From Laetmonice hystrix (Eukaryota): a DNA stretch of 64,000 bases. Below, piece by piece: positions 49,299 to 63,230 of this stretch; within the stretch, counting starts at the first letter, position 1, and every line of letters begins with the position of its first letter. Made by a program: the position numbers and the translations under genes. The DNA is taken from assembly GCA_965235115.1 (NCBI GenBank), contig OZ249436.1, forward strand, positions 20,708,001 to 20,772,000, read 5' to 3'. The notes below the pieces were generated by a model. The model was not told the DNA's origin. It saw nothing but the letters and a program-made list of their open reading frames with translations, and ran no database searches.

Positions 49299-50652
49299 AT
49301 GGAAACCCACTACAATGAGAGACTTGTGTTACCGTCTTTTCCGCGTGGTGGCAGCACTATCACCCCAGTCCCCTTGGGCACATTATTATGACGTTAGATA
49401 GTACGACCAACGACGAAATGCTAATCTTTCGCTGGGTACCGTAGTGCTATTGGATCCATGCTATTTGTTATGAAATATTATTGTGCGTTTAGGAGTTTTT
49501 CAACATCGTGGAGCCTATCAAGTTATTATTTTTCATAACAAATAGTCTAAATGCATCCTGCCACAGATTAGCATTTCGCCGTTCTATCGTCATACTAATG
49601 TATAGCCAAGATGACCAAGATACCCAGGTGACCATCTTCGATTTTTTTCAAATTTGGCATGCAGTTAGATCTGTGTATCTGAAGTACAATCCTAAAATTT
49701 TGCTCCAAAATACCCGACGGTCTCCGAGTTACACCCCGATAAGCGGGGGAGGGGGTACCCCTGAAAAAAATGTGTTTAATTCTGAGCCGTATTTAGAGGG
49801 CTACCATTCAGAAACTAAGAGCTGGCAACCAACTAAAAGTTAAACTTCAATATGTAGAGACCAGGGAAAAGCAATAACATTTTAATTCTTTGCTTATTCC
49901 TTGGAGCACCATGCCCCCCAAAATAAAAAAAAAACACATCGGAGAAAATGAAATTAAATATTCAAAAAATTTTCATGCAAAGGTTCCTTCTTGCAACTTC
50001 TTGATCTTTGGGGATTTGATTTATGGGTATATGAAATGCATGTAGACACCAAAATAATCTTGCAAAATTAGACACAGGTGGTGCCACTAGTAACAAAAGT
50101 TGGCTGATCGCTAAATTAGATGACCCATTTTGAGAGGCCATTTTGCCTATGTTGACAAGGTGGAAGAGCATTAGGACATTTTTCCTTGATAAAGCCCATT
50201 TTTGCCATTAAGGAAAACTAAGTCCCTAATCCCTTCCATTATTCCTTCCCTGTCAAATAATTTTTCAAATATCCATTTTGGTAAAATTGTTTTTATATCA
50301 TAAAATTTTTATTACTTGCCACAGAATTCTTGAAAGTGGTAAACAGCCTAAAACTGTTGGTCTTTTGTAGATTTTGTATTAGATTTAAATCTAATTAGAT
50401 TTAAATTAATTAGTTAATTACCAGTAAAAGCTCAACAGTTTAGGCTATTTGCCGGCATGCACTGTGACCTCTGTACTAGTGTGCTAGGATTCTAGGAATG
50501 TATCAATAGTATGCAAGCTTACATGTGATTTCATATTTTCCAACACAGATACAATATGAAGTCAAAAGAATGTAAACAAATAAATTAAACCAATTGTGTG
50601 TTTTTTTTTCTCTTTTACAGTGTAGATTGAGTCTGGATTCAGCTTTCCAAAC

Positions 50653-53416
50653 ATGAAGCCTGATCAGGAGAGGGTGCGAAATCTACTGACAGACACAGTG
50701 ACTCTCCTCTGTAAAAATGGCTTAACATATAATGACGAACTGAGGGTTGAAGCCCTCATTGGGATTACAGTTGATGAGGATGTGTTTCTTGTTCATGTCA
50801 ATGAATCTTACAAGAATGATGATCCGCGGCCCAAAAGTCCAGAAGTGCAGGCGTCGGACCAACCACCTCCAAACCTACGGGAGAAAGAGCGGCGTGGTGT
50901 CGGATCTGGTGAGAGTCCTGGCAGCAGGAGGCAGAGACAAGAGATGTTTGTTGATCTAACAGGGCGGGATACTCCAGCACCAGCTATGATGTCACCCCAC
51001 AGACAGGGACGTGGTGGCGTGGCCATCAGTCCCCGGATGGCGACCTCACCTCGCATGCGGGGTCCTTACGGGCGAGGGCAGCAGATGCAGTCTCCAGTCA
51101 ACCAAATGCGTCGTGGAAACCCAATGGGAGCCGGGGCTCGCCAACAGTTTTATCGTTCACCAGGAGCAGCGGGACAGATGCCACAGCGTCAGATGAGCCA
51201 GCGGATGATGTCGCCACAGATGAGAGGCCAGATGTATGCTCGACAACAGGGACCGAGACAGTTTAGTCCCATGCATGCATCACCACAAGTCAGACGAAGT
51301 CTTTCTGGAATAATGAATCAGCAGGTCAATGTGAGAGGCTTGTCTCCGCAAGCACAGGCTCAGCTCCTTAAGCAGCAGCAGCACGCAATGGCCAGTCAGA
51401 TGGCTGCACGACAACTACAACAACAACAACAACAGCAAAAAGGTCCACAAAATCCCGATGAGGTCATAGTGTTGGATGAGCCACCAGCCCCAGCTGGAGA
51501 CAAAGAAGCAGCATCTGTGCCCACGGTGACGCCTGTAGGTCCTGCCCAGAGGCGGATTCTTGGCTCGGTGCATTCTCAGCCCGGGTCCCAGCCAGGATCA
51601 CCAACGGTCTCAACCCCAGGAACCCCACCACAACCCATGACCATACAACCGGTTAATATCCAACCAATTGTTTCACAGCCACCCCCTGAGTCCAATGGGT
51701 CTCCGACAGTTGTCTTGCCAGAAACACCCCAGTTAACAGACACTGAGACAGAAGGTCCTGCATCTGATACACTCTCTCAGCTGGCAAGCGAAGTTGGCAA
51801 ACAGCAACGAGCCCGGGTTATGTCAGAAGAACCAACAGAAATCAAACCACAATCTGAGAAAACAGAATCCAACAGTGAACCCGTAATAGATGAAGCTACC
51901 ATTTCAGTGTTGCAGCAGATGGCAGAAACAACAGTGGAAGAACTTCAGAAGATTGCAGTTAAAGATAGCAGTGGTACCGAGCAGTCTGACTCTGAGAGTA
52001 TGCCAAGTGGAACGGTAACTATTGCCCCAACAGGAGTTCCTCCAGATGACAGAGATACAGGAGAACCAATCTCTCCCGGTCAATCCAATGCCACCAACAC
52101 AGGATCGACTCCTTCTCCTGCAGGAAGCCAGAAAAATGGTGAAAATACAACCAGAGGGACTGATGATACTAACATAAACTTAACTGTTCAAAGTGTTCAA
52201 GGTAACTTTTCTCAGTATGATCGCTTGGGTCAGTTCCGGGTTGTGAAAAAACCCCCAGCAGATGACCCTGATGATGACAGTGAGCCCCCAGCCAAGCGGC
52301 GAGCCTTGACTCCAGGCTCTGAGGCAGGCAGTGAGACAGGACAGTCGTCAGTTGGTGATGATGCCAGCACAAGCAGCATTCTGACAGACCAGGCTATGGA
52401 CCGGTCCAGTGTCAAACAAGAAATGACTGATGGGAACAAGAAACCTGTAAGTGTTAACATATAATTTTTTTTTGAGAGAGAGAGAGAGAGAGACTGAGCA
52501 CTTAGCAACGACAGTTGGGTCTGGCTTGATTTTTGTCATTTCCAAGGTAGCATCGGCAACTGACGGGTGAGGCCTCGTCCACATAGAAGTGTTAACATAC
52601 TATACATGATTAAGTAAAGTGTAAAATTTTGTTAAAATGGCACATTATGTAAATATACATGTCAAGACATCTTATATTTCTGTGAACATTTGAGGAAGAA
52701 AGGTACCGGTAGTTGTGAGCAGGAGAATATTTACATTTTATATTAAAGTTACTCTTTATTTTGTCTTTACCTTACAGGACAAAGGGACTATGGTGGTTCA
52801 GATGTGCAAAAATCCAGAGAACAACCTGACATCGTGGGAAGTTCGTGAGTTGTTAGAAAAGCACATCGTCAGTCCAGTTCTCAAGAAACAGGAGTGCACA
52901 GTGACAGCTTTCCGCATGTTCTGGAGAAGTAGTGCAGAAGATGTGGAGAATGCCTGGAAGAATATTGTTAAACAGCGACAGGAAATTGATGATATTGTTG
53001 CGAAGGAAAAGGGCCTGTCGTTTTTCATTTCGGCTGTGACCTGTGAAAATGCTCCTGCAGCAACCTTCCCGGCATTGGGTTATTGGGTGGTGACGCGACA
53101 CCCAGATTACAGCAAGGAACACTTGATGGCGACTGTCAAGGACCACAGCCATGATGCTGAACTGCGACTTATGTTGAAGGCTGATGGTATGAAAATGGAT
53201 GAGTTTGGGGCCCTCTGTCTTATGGTCAAAGACTATGGAGAGGGACTAGTGCAACGGAAAATTGGTGAAAGTGCTGCTGCCTGCTTGCAAACAGACAAAT
53301 CGCACCCTGTTGTTAGATTCATTCTCAAAGAGAATTTCTTCGAACATTTGCTGAAAAATGCCATGAAACATCTTCGGTCTGCATCATTTACAGCCAGCTT
53401 AGAGAAGGTTGTATGA
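50653..53416 (+). CDS. Uncharacterised 810-aa putative nuclear protein (orphan N-terminal domain, long Q/P/S-rich disordered region, folded C-terminal domain)
   Basis: Exon 50653-52446 (598 codons, CCT|GTAAGT, phase 0) joins exon 52778-53416 (ttacAG|GAC, 212 codons plus TGA) in frame. These are long non-repetitive ORFs with canonical splice sites. The product is not recognised. Confidence 0.88.
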
Positions 53417-53955: not shown

Positions 53956-54319
53956 CAGAGGTGCCAACTATTAAGACCTCCACGTAATCATTATGATTTG
54001 AGGATAATGGCTACGATATTATGATCTGTGTGATAAAAAATATAATTTGGGGCTAATTTTTGGCCAACACCCGTAAGATTTAATTTTGGTAATTTTTGTA
54101 TAATGTGCCTCAGTAAATGCTATTAGATTTCTGAAATATGATGCAAAAATGCCCCCAGAATGTACCATTTCACTCCTAGTTTTGAAAAATTTTACAGGGG
54201 AGCATGCTCTCAGACCCCACTAGAGCACTAGAAGCGCTTTGCGCCTTTGGCGCTCGCTATGTCAGCGACTTTGCCGCTGCATTATTACCATATCACATCT
54301 TCAAAGGTTGGCAACTCTG
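53956..54319. mobile_element. hAT-like MITE with exact 6-bp TSD
   Basis: TIRs cagaggtgccaac / gttggcaactctg (12/13), with CATCTG duplicated at 53950-53955 and 54320-54325. Confidence 0.78.
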
Positions 54320-57300
54320 CATCTGGCAACTGTCTGATTTGTCAGAGTGGAAAATTATTTGTACATCACTTGGCAGTAGATTTATTCAAACTTCAACATC
54401 ATTAATGATTAAGGAACTAGATTCCATTGATTAAGTTGATCGTGTAGACCAATAAGTACTAAGACATTACTGATTGTATGTGGTAAATTGACTCATAAAA
54501 TTTATTAAGGCATGCTCGTTTCAGTGCTCCTAAAATACGTCGGACATTCGGTCATGGCTGACAGTTGTCGACATTGTCCGACATTTGTGACTTTCCGTCA
54601 CGGTCTGATTTTCTAAAGCATACACTCGCTGCCCGTGTGATGAGATCCTGAATGTCGCTGGGTATTGATAACTAGTAAAAATATGTAAATGGTAACTGGT
54701 TAAAGAGTTTGTCATTTAGGCCCATGTGGTGGTTGATTGTGATGTCTGACATTGACCCAAAATGTCTTGACTTTCAGCTGTTCAACATCAGACAAAATGT
54801 CTGACGTATCTAAAACATTTCGGGAGCACTTTTGTTTCTTTACATCCATAATCACCTCAAAAGTTGGAAGTTCTCGAACTGCTTTGAAATATTTTTGCTT
54901 AAAAATGGAAACTTTGAACCACCATTCCATTCATCCAAAATGTTGGAATCTGTATTGCATGTTTGACAAAATACTTATGAGTAAATACTGAAACTTTAGT
55001 AATTGCGACTCGCTCTTGATACATAACAAGACCTCAGACCGAATTATCCAAGCCGTTTTTGCCTCAAGAACATGATTAAGAACAGACAATTTATCGGTGT
55101 TGTCTCAAGATTATGATTATGTAAAGCAAAGTCGAATTCAACAGGGGCTATGAGTAAGCTGTGCCTGTAGAATGCCAAAAGTACCAGCAAGAGGCTCTTT
55201 TCACACCTGTTGGCCATCTTAGTTTTCAGCCCTGTTGGAGTTCTACAGGGGGAGCCCTGTAACAATCTCGTTCAGATGGCAACTTGTGTGGAAATGAAAG
55301 GGGAGATGTTAATATTAACAAGTAAAGGCAGACGTTGGTATGACGGGCCCTGGCAGCAGGTTGTTCGGTCAGTTTATATCTGTCCACTTTATTGTTGTGT
55401 TTTTTGTATAGCCATGAGATACTTGACCGATTTACACCTAAAAGGAGTCAGTCAGAAACATTTGATCATTTTTTTACTGCACTTAGTGTAACAGTGGTCA
55501 GTCTGCAATATTACCAAAGTGGCCGTTGTGTTAAGTAGAAAACTATGTTGTGTACACAACTTTGGTGACGAGTATGAGTGGTGATTTGGGCTTGCAGTCG
55601 CCTGGTAATTTTCTAGGATATCCAACCACGTCAGGTCGTGGGCGTGTGTGCCCTCGATAAGAATAGTCCTAATTCGTGTAGTAGTTGTAAAATACTACAA
55701 TGTTGACAGATTGTCTAACTCTAAGAATCAAACTTGAAATAACGACTTTGTTTATATCAGAGTAGAGACTCGATGGTTATATACATACCTTGTGAATTAA
55801 TTTTTTTGGGATAAGATGCTGTCTTTGTAGAAAATTAAAAGTAGTTACTACATCATGTACGTATGTAGCATGTTATACGTTAGGGTATGTGTAAAGACCG
55901 CAGTACTGCGGTTACTGTATACATTCTATGGCTGGTGGCATGGACTTAGTTCAAAGATTCTTTATTTGAAGGATTGAAAACGGTATTATATGGCTAGATG
56001 ATGCTTCTAAATAAGCCTATAATGTACATGCCTAGAACAGTTTGGTACCGTCGATGATGTTGTATGTCAGGTAAACATACGTTTTTTTATGTATGGTATT
56101 CATATTTTATGGAAAGAATTTCATTTGTCGCCAGATTGAGCCACATGGTAGTGCGGCACATTTCCTGAAGGCGTCAGCCTGAAGTAATCGGATGCGAGTC
56201 CCTGTAAAGTTCATAAACAAACGTGGAATAATATAAATCCACCATTGAAAGCAAGATAATTCTTTGTTCTGATTTGAGCCTTCACTGTCAACTAACGTGC
56301 TTAATAAAATTTGCAGTTTGATTAGTTGCCTGATACCGGGCTATTCATTGAAGACAGCCATGTTTTTCTGCAGTCTTCATTAGTTCCGAATAACAACTAC
56401 AGATATGGGGAACGAGGTTATGGCATTGCTTTCTTTATCTGCTTATTCTGTTCTTTTTGTGACAAAATCTTCCCTGTAGTTTAGGGAGGTGCCATATCCT
56501 TTTTAGTAGTCCCCATCAGTTTTCATAAGAATTACATCATACCCATCAAGGTATCCGTTTAGAAATAAATGGGATGTTATTTTATAAGGAAAGATATTTA
56601 TTACATTTACATCGTCACTTACAAGGGTCCAATATATAAAACTCTACAGGACACTAACTTGACTAAGCATCTGTTGTGTAAATGTGTTACCATTAAATCT
56701 GTGTTGTAGCCGAATCATTTCTGTCGGAAGTCTGAAGGCCTGTGAAACGAATGTCGGGTGGTCTTGTCCACTGCTATGTTTACACAGTGTGGCTACAGAT
56801 AACAGTTCTATGAAAACAAATTAACACCTTTTATTTTATTTTCGCAATTTCAGAAGAATTAATGAGGTCCCTGTAAATTTGAGGTCAGATGTGAGGCGCA
56901 CCTTGCCGACACGAAGACCAAATTCTCTCTCTGTATCTGACTCCAGTCCAAGAAAACTCGGTTAGGGACAGAAGGATATGGAGTTTTATAGCAAGTAGAT
57001 ATTCGTCGTATGAATACTAGCTCGACTGATCTTTTAGTGCTCTTGTAACGTTCATCCATCAGCATGACTGGGAGAAATAGTTCCCATATTTTCTGAGAAA
57101 TAAAACAGATTATTATAATGTCACTAGATGGTTTATTCATTGACTGGCGTTACAACTAATGCTAATATTTTACCGTTTTTTTTTTTGTTTTTTTTGTTTT
57201 TTTTTTTTTTTGGGGGGGGGGGGGGGGGGTGTCACCGTAAGAGGTTCAGGATGGGCGGAGCCTTCTTTCAATCCTACCGATAGGTTTACGCATTGAATGA

Positions 57301-58787: not shown

Positions 58788-61700
58788 TTATGGAATTGTA
58801 ACTTCTATGGGCCTGCTTCTTCTCCTTCCATCCAACGATCTGAAAACAAGCCAAAGGTATCACAGGCAGCAGCCAACCATGCAGTACTAAAAACAACACA
58901 ATAGAAAATGTTTCTGCTTAACATAAAATGAACAGTATAGTCTCTCAATCAAGGAGCACAAATAGACAACGATTCACCAATAAGATCAAGTCATCAAATT
59001 TGTCTGTGGCCTCCAAAGTTTCTACCAGTTGTTGGTTATACTACATAAATGGCATGAAGCTCCAAGAAATGCTGTCCTGGGACAAAAAGTACTGGGTACT
59101 GTAACTTTGATAACTGGGATAAGGACAACAATCCTCCATCAACTGCACTAACCTTGTTGCCAACAGAACTTTCCCACTGGCACGACTGTTGGACACTAGA
59201 TCGTTCCACGTTTGACCTCCATCAGTACTTGACAAAAACGACAGGCCAGGAATTGCTGAGTTCACCTTCAGTTTTCCTTCGTCAATTCTATACAAAGGTT
59301 ATGAAAAGAATTGGATTAACCAATAATGATTTCATAATACAAGTGTGCAAACAGTGTGCATTTTATATGCAAGACCTTAGCTGGGCACAGCTTATTTTAT
59401 GCTATTTATATAATAGGGCTGAGGATTACAGGCTTTTGGAAAAGAAATAACAGAGATACACTTTTTTCACATACCCCATGTCCGGTATACACATAAAACC
59501 AGAGGATGAAAGAAGATAAAACATTTTGAAGAAACATGAAGTTTCGCAGACGTTTTAGAAGCAGATCATGCACGTCACACCCACAATGCAGGGCATTCCA
59601 GTACATGTTCTGGGACCTTGTTCACAAAGCACACGCAAGACTTGCGGACCCGCAAACTATTATTAAACAGTTGGAGGATGATAGTTTTGTGCTTTGTGAA
59701 TAAGGTCCCAGCTCTGGGACATCATCACTGTGCCTGGAGCTGGAGGCACACTACAATCCGGTACTTTAAAAGTAAAATTTTTACTTTCACTTACAGAGCT
59801 CCTGGTGGAGGGAGGTAATATTTTATGCCCAGCTTCTCGAGGCGCTGTAGTTCCCTGTAACCTAAGGTATTGGCAAACTTTGTCCAGTCTTCAGTCTTCA
59901 TGCGTTCCCGTCGATGATGCTGCATTTCGAGTTCCCATGGGGCACGGTGCCATGAGCGCTCCGCCAAGGCCAACATGCGGGGGTAGAGCATCATATGAAG
60001 GAACTCTGGTGTTCGCAACAACTCACCCCAAAGGTGGCCTTCCATGCCTAAAGAATGTAATATCAATGATGACATCCTCAACATACTACAGGACATTACC
60101 CTAATTCATACACGAACATAAACAGATTCTAAACCTTACAACTACCTCTATTATTGTGCTGGTGTGAACAGTCCATAAATTCTGATTTAGACATTTTAAT
60201 TGTCACCACATTTTTTATAACACAGCCAAATTTGATTACATAATCAAACTTACCGGTACATGCTGATAATTTATTGGGAAAAACTGGCAATTTTTATGAA
60301 ATTTTTCTTTCAATAAAAGGCCAATGATCCAAATTTAACTGGATAATTGAAAAGACCAAAAGTGAAATAGAACGGAAAAGTTGTATGGACCCTAATCATA
60401 CGGTTAAACCTAAAGTTTACCTATGATGTTTTCTGGCTTCTCCAGGGGTGGACATTTCCCAGCATCCTCGTCACAGACATCATCGCTGGTGATTGCCTTC
60501 CCATACAATTCAACATCAATGTTGTCATAGAAACGTTCGGGCATGAAGCCAAAGACCTTCCTGATATCGATGAACCTTGTAGCCCAGTACAATCCCCTTT
60601 CCTCCGGATCTGGTTCATGAGCATGGTCAAAGTACAGATGTGTAGCAGAACCAAGAACTACCTGTAATACCAGAAGCAGATTAGATTTTATTGGCCAGAA
60701 ACTAGGACATGGTACTAATTGGTAGCAATAAAAAAAACCCACACACCCCCTATCAGCCCAGTTTTGGGCCTTCCATGGTCGCTATTATTGATTTACATTT
60801 TATGAAACAAATTAATAAATATTTCAAATATTTTTTGTTTGACCAATTCCAACATTAATAGTGAAGGGCTGACTGTCAATTTACAAGATTTTTTTGAATT
60901 GCTAAGTGCATATACGATAGGGAAGGTGCCAACGGTAAGTATTGACAGCTTGACTATACCTTGTAGTTATTGTTGGCGAGTTCATGTGCCCGTTTTGCAG
61001 TATGGCCTCCCCATACATTGTGCCAAGCATTGGCTGTCAATGTTGTTGTGCCATCAAACTGCTGAACAACATCTCCTTTATAGAATATATCCTCCCATCC
61101 TTGTATGGCCACCTCCAGTTTTGTTGCAATCTGGACAACCCTATGACCAAAGTATTTCACAAGATCAGTCACATTATGAAGGTCGTCATGTTTTCTGTAA
61201 AACTCCGCACAGATGGGGGAGTCTGTAAAGGCTTGTGTCGGTACTTCATCTCCGCCAACATGGAATGTTTTCAGAGGCATCACATCTTTGTGTAGCTCAA
61301 TAAATGTGGCTATGATATGCTTGACAAACTTGTACGTTGACTCCATACACGGGTTAATGGCATTATCTTTGAACTGCTGCACACTCTGATAGACAGATTT
61401 ATCCATTGGATCTGACAGCAAATACTCCTCAGCCTCTGCCTTCTTCCCACTGTCCATAAATTTGAAGTAGCGAGCCTCCATAGCCTTGATGGCTGCACGG
61501 GCATGGCCGGGCATGTCTACCTCTGGAATGACCTCAATGTGACGCTCCTTGGCAAACTGGAGGATCTCCTTGTAATCTTCAATGGTGTAGTAGCCACAGC
61601 CAAGTCCTGTTGCTTCAGGCCCAGAACCCAGCGTTGGAATCAGACATGTCTTTTCATTAGGAGCATACCCACGCTTACTTCCCACCTGTCATGATGTCAT

Positions 61701-63230
61701 CAACACAAGAATAAAGATTAAATACCAAATTACAGACAACAGGGAAAAAAATCGCAGGATGTTTCTACCATTACAGGCTACACAATATTCAAAAACATCT
61801 TTTATGAGAAAAGAATCTCAGCAGAACAACCAGATATATTCCAGTACCTCCTGTAACTGTACTTTTACAATGTACTTAGAACTTTAACATGGTACACCCA
61901 CAACAAGGCATTCAAAGCAATCTGACCATGAAAAGGGCCATTTTTGGAAATAGAACTTAGACGGCATGGTTTACCTCAGTAAGCTCTGGCAAGCCTGGTA
62001 TCTCGACTCTCCATCCTTCATCCTCAGACAAGTGAAAATGCAGCTTGTTTAGTTTATACTGTGCCATTGTATCCAGAACTTTCATAACCTCCATCTTTGG
62101 GAAGAAATTTCTGCCAACATCTAACATTACACCCCGGAATGCAAACCTAGGAGCATCTACTATTTTTAGATCTGGGATTGCTTTTTGACTTTGTAGAAGA
62201 CAGAGTAAACTCTGTAGTCCATAGAAGACTCCCACTGGGCTCGCTCCAATGATGTTCACTGCAGATTTACTTCTCGACACCTCAAGGCTGTAAGCGTCTT
62301 CACTCATTAGCGTTCCTTTACCAGGCCTTGGCAGGTCTACTGTGCCAACTTGCAATGATATGTAGTTTTGCTCAGGGGCAATTCTCTGAATTTTCAGGCT
62401 AGTCTTTCCTGAAACAACATATGCATGTACAATCTATTAGTAAACATTTCTGGTGACATCTACCATGAAGTGTTAAACGAATTACACACACCAAGTTTAA
62501 TTTGGTATCAACCTACTTATTTGATGGAATGATTTTCAGTACCTGCCAAAAACGTTGCTTCATTTTCCAGGAGTACAGGTGCAGCAATGACCCATGTAGT
62601 ACGGTCAATCACCATTGATGCCTTGTTTTCAACAGTTATCTTCAATGGGGTGGGTAAAACCAATTCCCCTGCAACACCCTGGTCTTCAACCTCATTCTTA
62701 AGGTAACGAACATCTGGTGTGTATGGGTCGATTCGGTCTTGGTTCCATCTTTTCCACTTGGATGGCTTATCAAATTCTTTAACAAATGACAAGGATTCAC
62801 CCTCAGTACTTTTCAGGACCTTGGCTTCAGTATCTTTGACAGTAACAAACCAATTGGGGTATACATCAGTCCTTGCAGCTATGAAGCGGCCACCATTAAA
62901 ATGAATGTCCAGTTTTTCTCCTGGTCCCAAGGGTGACCACAATGAAGTGGGCTGCAGCTTGTGAAGGCCACCATTGATGTGACTGAGAAGCATGGCCCGA
63001 CTGGCCAGTTCTACATGCCCAAACTCTCTTACTTGCTCTCCCTCAATGTCGACCGGATGGAAGAAGAAGATGGCCCATGGGCCAGTTGTTACTTTCTCTG
63101 TGCCTGTGTTTGCCAACGTTATTTTGCCAACATAGGAATATTTCTCTACCAGGTTGTTCTCCACTTCATATGTGATAGTCAGATATGAAGACAGATAGGA
63201 CACAAGGCTCTCCTTCTCCATCTTGGTCAT
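58788..63230 (-). CDS. chb-like: Beta-N-acetylhexosaminidase / chitobiase, GH20, four-domain (CHB_HEX, GH20b, GH20 catalytic, C-terminal Ig-like); 842 aa from the in-window ATG
   Basis: Exons 63232-62543, 62408-61975, 61685-60960, 60661-60421, 60047-59795, 59287-59153 and 58839-58788, all GT-AG with compatible phases (1,0,0,1,2,2). The total is 2529 nt from ATG 63230 to TAA. Motifs include RGVMLDVGRNF, KLHFHLSEDEGWR, IEVIPEVDMPGH, catalytic HVGGDEV, HLYFDH, GHLWGE, YPRMLALAERSW and YLPPPGA. An acceptor 2 nt before the ATG implies an upstream exon outside the window. Confidence 0.95.

What the first reader, a model, noticed from the sequence alone, without database searches (positions are those of the whole stretch)
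52778..53416. Last exon of the orphan gene may encode a tandem EthD-like (dimeric alpha/beta barrel) module fused to a nuclear disordered protein
Seen: one exon, in phase 0, encodes a 212-aa globular-looking region made of two loosely similar halves (MVVQMCKNPENNLTSWEVRELLEKH...FWRSSAEDVENAW...AKEKGLSFF and YWVVTRHPDYSKEHLMATVKDH...DEFGALCLMVKDY...TDKSHPVVRF). Known: EthD/ABM-like DABB domains have the pattern beta-R.P..S.EEF.....H...beta...F.S.E...A....D...F and occur mostly in small microbial enzymes. Inference: an enzyme-like or ligand-binding barrel was joined as a single exon to a SUMO-linked nuclear scaffold. I do not recognise this architecture from any described protein.
Basis: partly seen in the sequence, partly recalled or inferred. 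Interest (0 to 1): 0.72.

Follow-up and report, generated by a model that had tools for sequence, protein, structure and literature searches.

The report
Rep-like terminal exon of worm regulator
The last exon of this marine-worm gene encodes one compact domain shaped like the DNA-handling head of plasmid and virus replication (Rep) proteins but without their catalytic residues. It belongs to a large, undescribed family of interchangeable last exons, sometimes mixed with zinc-finger exons, that sit behind a shared front-end exon, much as in the fly genes lola and mod(mdg4).

Summary
The exon is real. Window 52778-53416 (+) has a phase-0 acceptor that matches a phase-0 GTAAGT donor at 52446/7, and it encodes 212 aa plus a stop. 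The tandem EthD/DABB reading fails. The two halves are unrelated (hhalign probability 1.4%). A confident AlphaFold model (pLDDT 93.5) shows one domain: a beta-alpha-beta-beta-alpha-beta core plus an alpha-alpha-beta-alpha-beta extension. Its best structural matches in four libraries are rolling-circle Rep (HUH) proteins. No HUH histidines or catalytic tyrosine are conserved, and there is no sequence-profile link to Rep_1.

The gene is not an orphan. The genome holds 56 intact copies of this domain in 10 loci, each downstream and on the same strand of one conserved N-terminal "hub" exon. Arrays reach about 16-17 copies. Of 24 array exons tested, 23 have a phase-0 acceptor at the domain start. 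One array also carries C2H2 zinc-finger terminal exons. A second genome has the same layout, and one 2.2-kb JGI contig joins hub and domain in a single ORF.

Best reading: a catalytically dead Rep-like module, probably nucleic-acid-binding, serves as the variable end of lola/mod(mdg4)-like regulators. No RNA data were available. DNA binding is inferred. The scan had not found this before on other DNA.

The parts
50653..50814 (+). N-terminal 'hub' domain (aa 1-54): one helix followed by a beta-hairpin
   Evidence: It is 70-85% identical in more than 100 public proteins, with L11, L12, L19, C20, N22 and G23 invariant. The genome holds 36 hub exons. The AF2 model has helix 3-21 and strands 29-40 and 43-54, with pLDDT 76 and pTM 0.33. 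No Pfam or known-fold match was found.
50653..52446 (+). First coding exon: 598 codons, made of the hub plus a roughly 540-aa P/Q/S/G-rich disordered linker
   Evidence: The open frame runs from the ATG at 50653, and a phase-0 donor AAACCT|GTAAGT lies at 52446/52447. An ortholog (P0001) is 72% identical over 99% of it.
50947..50961 (+). FVDLT, a SUMO-interaction-motif-like hydrophobic/acidic patch in the linker
   Evidence: It is conserved in P0001 and P0002 (VVDLT) and in P0097 and P0098; position. The SIM reading is an inference from the motif only.
51463..51483 (+). VIVLDEP, a second SIM-like patch
   Evidence: It is identical in P0001 and P0002. Similar V/I-rich acidic patches occur in the array-type hub exons. 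The SIM reading is an inference.
52447..52777 (+). Intron of 331 nt, GTAAGT...TTACAG, containing a (GA)n run
   Evidence: Read directly from the sequence. The laid DNA contigs carry many indels and SNPs here, unlike the exon. The junction is not verified by RNA.
52778..53416 (+). Terminal coding exon: 212 aa plus TGA, one Rep/HUH-like alpha+beta domain without catalytic motifs
   Evidence: translation, model and fold matches; no conserved His or Tyr motifs, no sequence link to Rep_1; family size.
52898..53170 (+). Ferredoxin-like core, residues 41-131 (beta1 AFRxxW, alpha1, beta2 FF[IV]SA[IV]T, beta3 PAxxYWVV, alpha2, beta4)
   Evidence: Secondary structure from the AF2 model. Conserved columns are R46, W49, W60, D71, S85, P98 (invariant), Y102 and W103.
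53201..53407 (+). C-terminal extension, residues 142-210 (alpha, alpha, beta, alpha, beta), carrying the invariant K151-D152
   Evidence: The Rep_1 structural matches extend through this part (query residues 21-200; 5-205).

Best explanation
The exon encodes the C-terminal module of an 810-aa nuclear-type regulator. That protein consists of a small conserved N-terminal 'hub' (a helix plus a beta-hairpin), a long disordered linker with SIM-like patches, and this 200-aa domain.

The domain is a single alpha+beta fold of the Rep/HUH-endonuclease type, closest to the pC194-family rolling-circle initiators (Rep_1). It has kept the scaffold but not the HUH metal site or the catalytic tyrosine, so it most likely binds nucleic acid rather than cutting it.

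It belongs to a family of terminal exons that are spliced in phase 0 onto a hub exon. In paralogous loci one hub exon is followed by up to about 16-17 such exons, and in at least one locus also by C2H2 zinc-finger exons. Those loci probably produce many isoforms that share the hub and differ in the target-recognition module, as Drosophila lola and mod(mdg4) do. The window's locus is the single-variant form.

Shown: the exon and its phase, family size and layout, intactness and purifying selection, the predicted fold and its matches, and the loss of catalytic motifs.
Inferred: actual alternative splicing, nucleic-acid binding, hub oligomerisation, and descent from a Rep gene.
For: Exon anatomy.

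Model: pLDDT 93.5, pTM 0.89.

Fold matches:
- AFDB Swiss-Prot: the top 8 hits are all plasmid Rep proteins. The top seven have E 2.4e-6 to 1.2e-4 and TM 0.45-0.49 over query residues 21/22-200, well ahead of the next class at E about 2e-3.
- ESM Atlas: seven of the ten rows carry Rep-type Pfam families (Rep_1, Inovirus Gp2/YagK_YfjJ_C, REP_ORF2-G2P, Rep_OBD) and an eighth is named 'Replication protein'. TM by query is 0.41-0.61 over 123-182 aligned residues.
- AFDB clusters: many hits named 'Replication protein' at E 1e-5 to 1e-3.

Layout:
- All 56 intact copies lie in 10 loci, each downstream and on the same strand of one hub exon.
- 23 of 24 tested exons have a phase-0 YAG acceptor with a pyrimidine tract within 5 codons of the domain start, against 3 and 6 of 24 in the other phases. 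Many lack any usable ATG.
- Hub exons end in phase-0 donors.
- The same tandem layout with phase-0 acceptors occurs in another assembly, GCA_022702875.1.
- P0108, from a 2237-nt JGI contig, is one ORF of hub + linker + domain.

Selection: the closest paralog pair has dN/dS 0.24, and median identity between paralogs is 30% with no stop codons.

Link to DNA binding:
- In the C1:19.92-19.95 Mb locus, two terminal exons with phase-0 acceptors encode paired C2H2 fingers (Pfam E 3.6e-9 and 1.1e-9) between the hub exon and the domain array.
- Other hub proteins end in HTH_psq or C2H2.
- The family's median pI is 8.8.
Against: - There is no RNA evidence for the 52446-52778 junction or for alternative use of the array exons.
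- Profile-profile comparison with pC194 Rep and with a 12-sequence Rep_1 alignment gives probabilities of 0.5% and 0.3%, so common descent is not shown.
- The window's own copy is near neutral (pI 6.8, net charge -1), which is not typical of a DNA binder.
- The homodimer test of the hub gave no verdict.
- The window's locus has a single terminal exon, so the isoform-array mechanism applies to its paralogs, not to this gene.
Confidence: 0.6

Rival explanations
1. The domain is a generic ferredoxin-like or ACT-like module that binds a protein or a small ligand. Its resemblance to Rep would then be convergence on a common alpha+beta sandwich, and the variable exons would diversify partner or ligand choice rather than DNA targets.
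Against: Rep proteins are the only class that matches nearly the whole domain, including the C-terminal extension, and they head four independent libraries. The domain exons share arrays with C2H2 finger exons, and the hub also pairs with HTH_psq, which points to a DNA-recognition role. The family's median pI is 8.8.
Confidence: 0.22
2. One reading: a tandem EthD/ABM-like dimeric alpha/beta barrel, meaning an enzyme-like or ligand-binding pseudo-dimer.
For: The first half is a beta-alpha-beta-beta-alpha-beta unit of about 90 aa, the topology of a DABB monomer. IsdG appears in the Foldseek PDB list.
Against: The second half is alpha-alpha-beta-alpha-beta, not a second beta-alpha-beta-beta-alpha-beta unit. 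The halves are unrelated (probability 1.4%). No EthD or ABM Pfam hit appears in the exon or in 75 relatives. IsdG ranks 29th with TM 0.21.
Confidence: 0.04
3. The ORFs are copies of a mobile element or endogenous virus gene (an active or decaying Rep/transposase) rather than host exons, and they lie near hub genes by chance.
For: The fold is Rep-like. One relative (P0222/L032) is followed by a P-loop segment with Walker A, Walker B and motif-C-like signatures and a weak papillomavirus E1 (SF3) helicase hit at E 0.012. An AFDB hit is named 'SF3 helicase domain-containing protein'.
Against: All 56 copies lie on the same strand downstream of one of 10 hub exons. 23 of 24 have phase-0 acceptors and many have no start codon. 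There is no HUH motif and no catalytic Tyr. The paralogs are old (30% identity), yet all are intact and the closest pair has dN/dS 0.24. A hub-domain fusion ORF exists in P0108. No helicase-linked form was found in this genome with two queries.
Confidence: 0.04
4. The exon is coding, but the array ORFs in paralogous loci are separate single-exon genes or constitutive exons, not alternative last exons. There would then be no isoform diversification.
For: No RNA data exist. Some array ORFs do begin with ATG right at the acceptor position.
Against: About half of the array ORFs have their first Met 40-65 residues inside the domain. Every ORF ends in a stop, so they cannot be consecutive internal exons of one mRNA. 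The acceptor phase matches the hub donor phase.
Confidence: 0.1

Closest known systems
Rolling-circle plasmid initiators of the pC194/pUB110 family (Pfam Rep_1, PF01446) and the wider HUH endonuclease superfamily (Inovirus gpII-like proteins; CRESS-DNA virus, parvovirus and geminivirus Rep nuclease domains)
   Same: The predicted fold and element order match: helix, beta1, long helix, beta2-beta3 hairpin, helix, beta4, then a helix in the position that carries the catalytic Tyr in Rep, plus the C-terminal extension. Coverage of query residues 21-200 is nearly complete. By the Foldseek ranges and element order and the pC194 Rep sequence, beta1 (AFRxxW) falls where motif I (FLTLT) lies. The invariant P98 before beta3 falls where the Pro of the NPHFH (HUH) strand lies. 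This mapping is my inference, not a residue-level alignment.
   Different: No HUH histidines are present (no column has more than 36% His). No conserved Tyr lies on the motif-III helix, where an invariant K151-D152 sits instead. There is no profile-level sequence similarity. The domain sits at the C-terminus of a spliced animal protein behind a disordered linker, not in a plasmid or virus replication protein.
Drosophila lola and mod(mdg4) loci (my own knowledge: common 5' exons encoding a BTB domain are joined to one of many alternative 3' exons encoding C2H2 or FLYWCH DNA-binding modules)
   Same: One exon for a conserved N-terminal domain is followed on the same strand by an array of stop-terminated exons. 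All have acceptors in the same phase, and each encodes a variant of one module. C2H2 finger exons are mixed into one array.
   Different: The N-terminal domain is not BTB; it is a 54-aa helix plus hairpin with no Pfam match. The main variable module is the Rep-like domain rather than zinc fingers. Alternative or trans-splicing is not demonstrated. The window's own locus has only one terminal exon.
   Same: Residues 41-131 form a ferredoxin-like beta-alpha-beta-beta-alpha-beta unit of about 90 aa.
   Different: There is no second unit, no internal repeat, no Pfam hit, and only a rank-29 structural match at TM 0.21.
Origin-binding domains of papillomavirus E1 and polyomavirus large T antigen (my own knowledge: Rep-like folds that bind double-stranded DNA without nicking it)
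   Same: They are a precedent for a Rep-type fold that has lost the nicking chemistry and serves as a sequence-specific DNA-binding module. That is the mechanism proposed here.
   Different: They are viral proteins fused to SF3 helicases. They did not appear among the top matches here, so this is an analogy of mechanism only.

Membership tests
EthD / ABM dimeric alpha+beta barrel (tandem form) | Two ferredoxin-like beta-alpha-beta-beta-alpha-beta units (or a homodimer of one) whose sheets pack into a barrel | tested here: not met
   The AF2 model has one beta-alpha-beta-beta-alpha-beta unit (residues 41-131) followed by alpha-alpha-beta-alpha-beta. Profile comparison of the halves gives probability 1.4%.
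EthD / ABM dimeric alpha+beta barrel (tandem form) | Sequence match to Pfam EthD or ABM models | tested here: not met
   The exon has no Pfam family at E<=1. Neither EthD nor ABM is among the 8 families matched by any of the 75 members at E<=0.1.
EthD / ABM dimeric alpha+beta barrel (tandem form) | Closest structural neighbours are DABB proteins | tested here: not met
   The only ABM protein listed is IsdG (1xbw) at rank 29, with E 0.017 and TM 0.21. No DABB protein appears among the top AFDB, Atlas or VIA rows.
HUH endonuclease / Rep_1 (PF01446) | Rep nuclease-domain fold | tested here: met
HUH endonuclease / Rep_1 (PF01446) | HUH motif: two metal-binding histidines on the central strand | tested here: not met
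   No alignment column reaches 40% His. The beta3 consensus is P-A-V-x-Y-W-V-V, whereas Rep_1 proteins show HPHFH at the corresponding strand.
HUH endonuclease / Rep_1 (PF01446) | Catalytic tyrosine (motif III, ExxKY in the pC194 family) on the helix after beta4 | tested here: not met
   The only conserved aromatic Tyr column is Y102 (Y/F), which is on a strand. The helix at 142-152 ends in an invariant K151-D152 with no conserved Tyr.
HUH endonuclease / Rep_1 (PF01446) | Detectable sequence or profile homology | tested here: not met
   There is no Pfam hit. hhalign of the family profile against pC194 Rep gives probability 0.5%, and against a 12-sequence Rep_1 alignment 0.3%.
HUH endonuclease / Rep_1 (PF01446) | Association with a helicase, as in Rep-SF3 helicase proteins of eukaryotic ssDNA viruses | tested here: inconclusive
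   One family member (P0222, HMM E 1e-33) is followed on its contig by a GAPDSGKT / IFIDEA / PMLIACQ segment with a sub-threshold PPV_E1_C hit at E 0.012. An AFDB hit is named as an SF3 helicase protein, with probability 0.57. No such form was found in the window's genome.
lola / mod(mdg4)-type multi-isoform loci | A common 5' exon encoding an N-terminal domain, upstream and on the same strand as the variable exons | tested here: met
   Each of the 10 loci that hold the 56 domain copies has one hub exon 1.7-20 kb upstream on the same strand.
lola / mod(mdg4)-type multi-isoform loci | Several alternative 3' exons, each with its own acceptor in the shared phase and its own stop | tested here: met
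   This is met in paralogous loci: 23 of 24 exons have phase-0 acceptors and all end in stops, and hub donors are phase 0. A second genome shows the same. It is not met for the window's own locus, which has one terminal exon.
lola / mod(mdg4)-type multi-isoform loci | Transcripts that join the common exon to different terminal exons | not testable with these tools
   No RNA run holds the stretch, and the four runs found behave as DNA. The only indirect evidence is one contiguous hub-linker-domain ORF on a 2237-nt JGI contig.
lola / mod(mdg4)-type multi-isoform loci | BTB/POZ N-terminal domain | tested here: not met
   The hub has no Pfam match. Its model is a helix plus a beta-hairpin, with no known-fold match.

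The most novel reading that the evidence does not exclude
Annelids, and possibly other spiralians, may possess an undescribed transcription-factor superfamily. In it, a catalytically dead Rep (HUH) nuclease domain, captured from a Rep-helicase gene of a virus or transposon, serves as the sequence-specific DNA-binding module. That module is diversified by arrays of up to about 17 alternative last exons spliced to one small oligomerising hub domain. This would be an independent, non-BTB and non-zinc-finger reinvention of the lola/mod(mdg4) strategy.
Probability: 0.35. Interest if true: 0.82.

Novelty: new variant of a known kind. Interest (0 to 1): 0.68.

Why it matters
If the reading holds, this adds a new DNA-binding-domain class to animal regulators. 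The class would derive from a replication-initiator nuclease fold and has no Pfam model. It would also be a second, independent example outside insects of isoform diversification by arrays of alternative terminal exons behind one shared N-terminal domain. It would assign a role to dozens of 'hypothetical' ORFs per annelid genome that gene predictors currently call as separate small proteins. It is directly testable by DAP-seq or SELEX on each exon and by Iso-Seq for splicing. Even on the conservative reading, the finding corrects the EthD/DABB idea and shows that the gene is not an orphan.

Tried and rejected
- Sequence searches of the exon gave nothing usable: Pfam, PDB by sequence and by profile (only chance-level Pumilio and SeqA rows), PHROGs and the ESM Atlas by features.
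- PDB Foldseek found no match at E<=1e-3.
- Internal-duplication test of the two halves was negative.
- Profile-profile tests against Rep_1 were both negative: a single pC194 Rep and a 12-sequence alignment built from plasmid records. My last homologous-protein search returned only near-identical pC194 Rep copies and was useless for building a diverse profile.
- RNA evidence: the run search found four runs of one sample, none on record as RNA. The laid contigs run through the intron and show no 52446-52778 joint, so they are DNA and say nothing about splicing.
- Complex prediction on two copies of hub residues 1-56 gave no verdict (score 0.02, partner pLDDT below 50). This is neither for nor against oligomerisation.
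- Hub fold searches found no convincing match.
- Searches of the window's genome for the helicase-linked form, using the P0222 middle region and the P-loop segment, found nothing.
- Literature searches found nothing relevant on domesticated HUH/Rep transcription factors, lola/mod(mdg4)-like arrays outside insects, or the accession codes of the second genome.
- The organism names of most relatives could not be recovered.
- No canonical poly(A) signal lies on the + strand within 2.4 kb of the stop; the first is ATTAAA at 55834. The 3' end is therefore undefined.
Full report
**1. The observation**

Window 52778-53416 (+) translates into 212 residues followed by TGA. The six bases before it are TTACAG, behind a pyrimidine-rich tract. 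The upstream open frame (ATG at 50653) ends at AAACCT|GTAAGT after codon 598.

The exon is clearly under constraint. In a related assembly the orthologous pieces lie about 2 kb apart on one contig. The disordered exon there is 72% identical and the terminal exon 92% identical. In the DNA contigs of the only public sample that holds the stretch, the intron and 3' flank carry many SNPs and indels. The exon carries a single difference, 52945 G>T, which is a synonymous Val codon change.

Those four runs behave as DNA: their contigs run through the intron and show no joint. The splice junction is therefore supported by sequence logic and comparison only, not by RNA.

**2. It is not an orphan and not a duplicated barrel**

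A six-frame search of the window's own genome (627 Mb) finds 56 matches to the 212 aa, none with an internal stop. An exhaustive HMMER search of 1.8 billion cluster representatives finds 138 relatives at E<=1e-3, nearly all 200-250 aa long.

An alignment of 75 members (A1) shows a clear signature. P98 and K151 are invariant. R46, W49, W60, D71, S85, W103 and D152 are at least 90% conserved. The consensus motifs are AFRxxWR, FFVSAIT, PAVxYWVV and KDxxxGxV.

Profile-profile comparison of residues 20-94 with 95-212 gives probability 1.4%.

**3. The fold**

AlphaFold2 with alignment A1 gives a confident single-domain model (pLDDT 93.5, pTM 0.89). The element order is helix 20-36, strand 41-48, helices 53-75, strands 80-92 and 95-106, helix 113-122 and strand 128-131. 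These are followed by helices 142-149 and 157-170, strand 179-183, helix 186-201 and strand 206-210. In short, it is one ferredoxin-like beta-alpha-beta-beta-alpha-beta core plus an alpha-alpha-beta-alpha-beta extension, not two barrel halves.

Four structure libraries give the same answer:
- In AFDB Swiss-Prot the eight best hits are all rolling-circle plasmid Rep proteins. The top seven have E 2.4e-6 to 1.2e-4 and TM 0.45-0.49 over query residues 21/22-200. The eighth, pC194 Rep (P03862), has E 1.3e-3 and TM 0.36. They precede a different class of short generic matches at E about 2e-3.
- In the ESM Atlas, seven of the ten rows carry Rep-type Pfam families (Rep_1 PF01446, Inovirus Gp2/YagK_YfjJ_C, REP_ORF2-G2P, Rep_OBD) and an eighth is named 'Replication protein'. 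TM by query is 0.41-0.61 over 123-182 aligned residues.
- AFDB clusters list many 'Replication protein' entries, and BFVD lists microvirus, CRESS-DNA virus and rudivirus Reps.

The only ABM/DABB protein listed (IsdG) is rank 29 at TM 0.21. I conclude that the fold is Rep/HUH-like with moderate confidence, and that the EthD/DABB assignment is refuted.

**4. Membership in the HUH family fails on chemistry and on sequence**

No column of A1 has more than 36% His. The strand that corresponds by position to the HUH strand reads P-A-V-x-Y-W-V-V. The only conserved Tyr (Y102, Y/F) lies on that strand. The helix in the position of Rep motif III ends in an invariant K151-D152 without a Tyr.

For comparison I took pC194 Rep from the plasmid record, plus eleven diverse Rep_1 proteins. 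They show FLTLT, HPHFH and ExxKY motifs. hhalign of A1 against pC194 Rep, and against that 12-sequence alignment, gives probabilities of 0.5% and 0.3%.

So this domain has the shape of a Rep nuclease domain, but it is not a demonstrable member of the family and almost certainly not a nuclease. From Foldseek ranges and element order, beta1 (AFRxxW) falls where motif I lies, and the invariant Pro98 falls where the Pro of NPHFH lies. That mapping is my inference, not a residue-level alignment.

**5. Genomic layout**

The first 54 residues of the protein form a second conserved unit, the 'hub'. It is 70-85% identical in more than 100 public proteins. Two of these are named as hypothetical proteins of the tubeworms Ridgeia and Lamellibrachia, so the organism is an annelid or close to one. 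The genome has 36 hub exons.

Every one of the 56 domain copies lies downstream, on the same strand, of one of ten hub exons:

| Hub exon (G000) | Strand | Domain copies downstream |
|---|---|---|
| C1:19946203 | - | 16 |
| C1:46642147 | - | 17 |
| C1:29327427 | + | 7 |
| C2:16943822 | + | 6 |
| C3:12932393 | - | 2 |
| C1:36756653 | + | 2 |
| C18:1917523 | + | 2 |
| C3:44484669 | + | 1 |
| C1:20797294 | + | 1 |
| C1:20758653 (the window's own locus) | + | 1 |

In 30 kb, 29 kb and 8.5 kb of three such loci I located the domain ORFs with an HMM and inspected their starts. Of 24 exons, 23 have a YAG acceptor with a pyrimidine tract in phase 0 within five codons of the domain start. The other two phases give 3 and 6 of 24, and a control position inside the domain gives 0-4 of 24. 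About half have no Met before residue 40-65 of the domain, so they cannot be free-standing genes.

Hub exons end in phase-0 donors: TCACAG|GTGGGT, GATATG|GTCAGT and the window's AAACCT|GTAAGT.

The array members are old. Median pairwise identity is 30% and dS is saturated, yet all are intact. The closest pair has dN/dS 0.24.

The same layout exists in an unrelated NCBI assembly (GCA_022702875.1). Eight domain ORFs lie in 13 kb on one strand, each behind a phase-0 acceptor. A 2237-nt JGI contig (P0108/L018) carries hub, linker and domain in one uninterrupted 444-aa ORF, which is what a spliced mRNA of such a locus would look like.

**6. What the module probably does**

In the C1:19.92-19.95 Mb locus, the stretch between the hub exon and the first Rep-like exon holds two more stop-terminated exons with phase-0 acceptors. 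Each encodes a pair of C2H2 zinc fingers (Pfam zf-C2H2 E 3.6e-9 and 1.1e-9, above the curated cut-off). A third exon there encodes an unrecognised 174-aa module. Elsewhere, hub proteins end in an HTH_psq domain (E 9e-11) or in C2H2-like fingers that are below the curated Pfam cut-off.

The Rep-like domain thus occupies the same slot as classical DNA-binding domains in one family of alternatively terminated genes. Three points make a nucleic-acid-recognition role the most economical reading: that shared slot, the Rep-type scaffold, and a basic family-wide median pI of 8.8. The array would supply alternative specificities.

This is the logic of Drosophila lola and mod(mdg4) (my own knowledge), but with a different N-terminal domain and a different variable module. 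It remains an inference. The window's own copy is near neutral (pI 6.8). The hub's oligomerisation is untested: its monomer model is an open helix plus hairpin with pTM 0.33, and the dimer test gave no verdict.

**7. A lead on origin**

One family member (P0222, HMM E 1e-33) sits on a 3.5-kb contig from another animal sample. Its ORF ends at AAG|GTGAAT. After about 90 bases, behind a pyrimidine tract and an AG, another frame reads a P-loop segment with GAPDSGKT, IFIDEA and PMLIACQ. The only Pfam hit spanning that whole segment is the papillomavirus E1 (SF3) helicase, below threshold at E 0.012. An AFDB cluster hit to residues 12-161 is named 'SF3 helicase domain-containing protein', with 19% identity and probability 0.57.

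A Rep nuclease domain followed by an SF3 helicase is the standard architecture of eukaryotic ssDNA-virus Reps (my own knowledge). These two hints therefore fit capture of the domain from such a gene, but they are weak. I only describe that contig. Nothing similar was found in the window's genome.

**8. Verdict**

The EthD/DABB interpretation is wrong in its specifics but right that an unusual alpha/beta module is fused to a disordered nuclear-type protein.

What is there is a member of a large, unannotated family of Rep-like terminal exons attached to a shared hub. In sister loci the family is arranged as lola/mod(mdg4)-like arrays.

- Novelty: a new variant of known kinds, namely isoform arrays and exapted replication-protein folds.
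- Interest: fairly high.
- Limits: no RNA evidence, and no biochemical evidence for DNA binding.

Noticed in passing
L011:5001-6089 (-) = G000:C1:19942001-19943089: Two stop-terminated exons with phase-0 acceptors lie between a hub exon and its array of 16 Rep-like exons. Each encodes a pair of C2H2 zinc fingers (Pfam zf-C2H2 E 3.6e-9 and 1.1e-9). One locus therefore mixes finger modules and Rep-like modules.
   Followed up: yes
L011:4170-4691 (-) = G000:C1:19941170-19941691: A further 174-aa stop-terminated ORF with a strong phase-0 acceptor lies in the same array. It has no Pfam match and may be a third kind of terminal module.
   Followed up: partly
L032:362-2187 (Logan contig of SRR30401269): A family member (HMM E 1e-33) is followed, after an intron-like gap of about 90 nt, by a P-loop segment (GAPDSGKT, IFIDEA, PMLIACQ) with a weak SF3-helicase (PPV_E1_C) hit at E 0.012. 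This is a possible Rep-helicase relative of the domain. I described it only.
   Followed up: partly
P0177 / L019:10001-17725: A 2574-aa protein in a bacterial gene neighbourhood (GreA, beta-lactamase, MFS genes) matches residues 115-171 of the domain in six stretches (E 2.3e-8). It may be a chance repeat match or a distant bacterial relative of the K-D helix region.
   Followed up: no
window 50947-50961 and 51463-51483; hub exons in L011, L012, L015: SIM-like patches (FVDLT, VIVLDEP) in the linker are conserved in orthologs. Array-type hub exons carry similar V/I-rich acidic patches and a conserved PGCS[TAQ]W motif near their 3' end, which the window's long linker lacks.
   Followed up: partly
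window 49500-50400, 52506-52672 and 54009-54342: Contig word depth is tens to hundreds of times higher than over the gene itself: hundreds to about 23,000, against about 30-60 over the gene. This suggests dispersed repeats flank the gene and sit in its intron.
   Followed up: no
window 60410-63230 (-): Several minus-strand ORFs (for example 60954-61685 and 61957-62355) look to me like exons of a beta-hexosaminidase (GH20-type) gene converging on the 3' end of the hub gene. This is judged from motifs by eye and was not tested.
   Followed up: no
ESM Atlas row 3: The hub hairpin gives a weak shape match to a mollusc cluster named 'zinc finger and BTB domain-containing protein 3 isoform X9', with C2H2 fingers. 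This hints that molluscs may have hub-plus-finger multi-isoform genes too.
   Followed up: no
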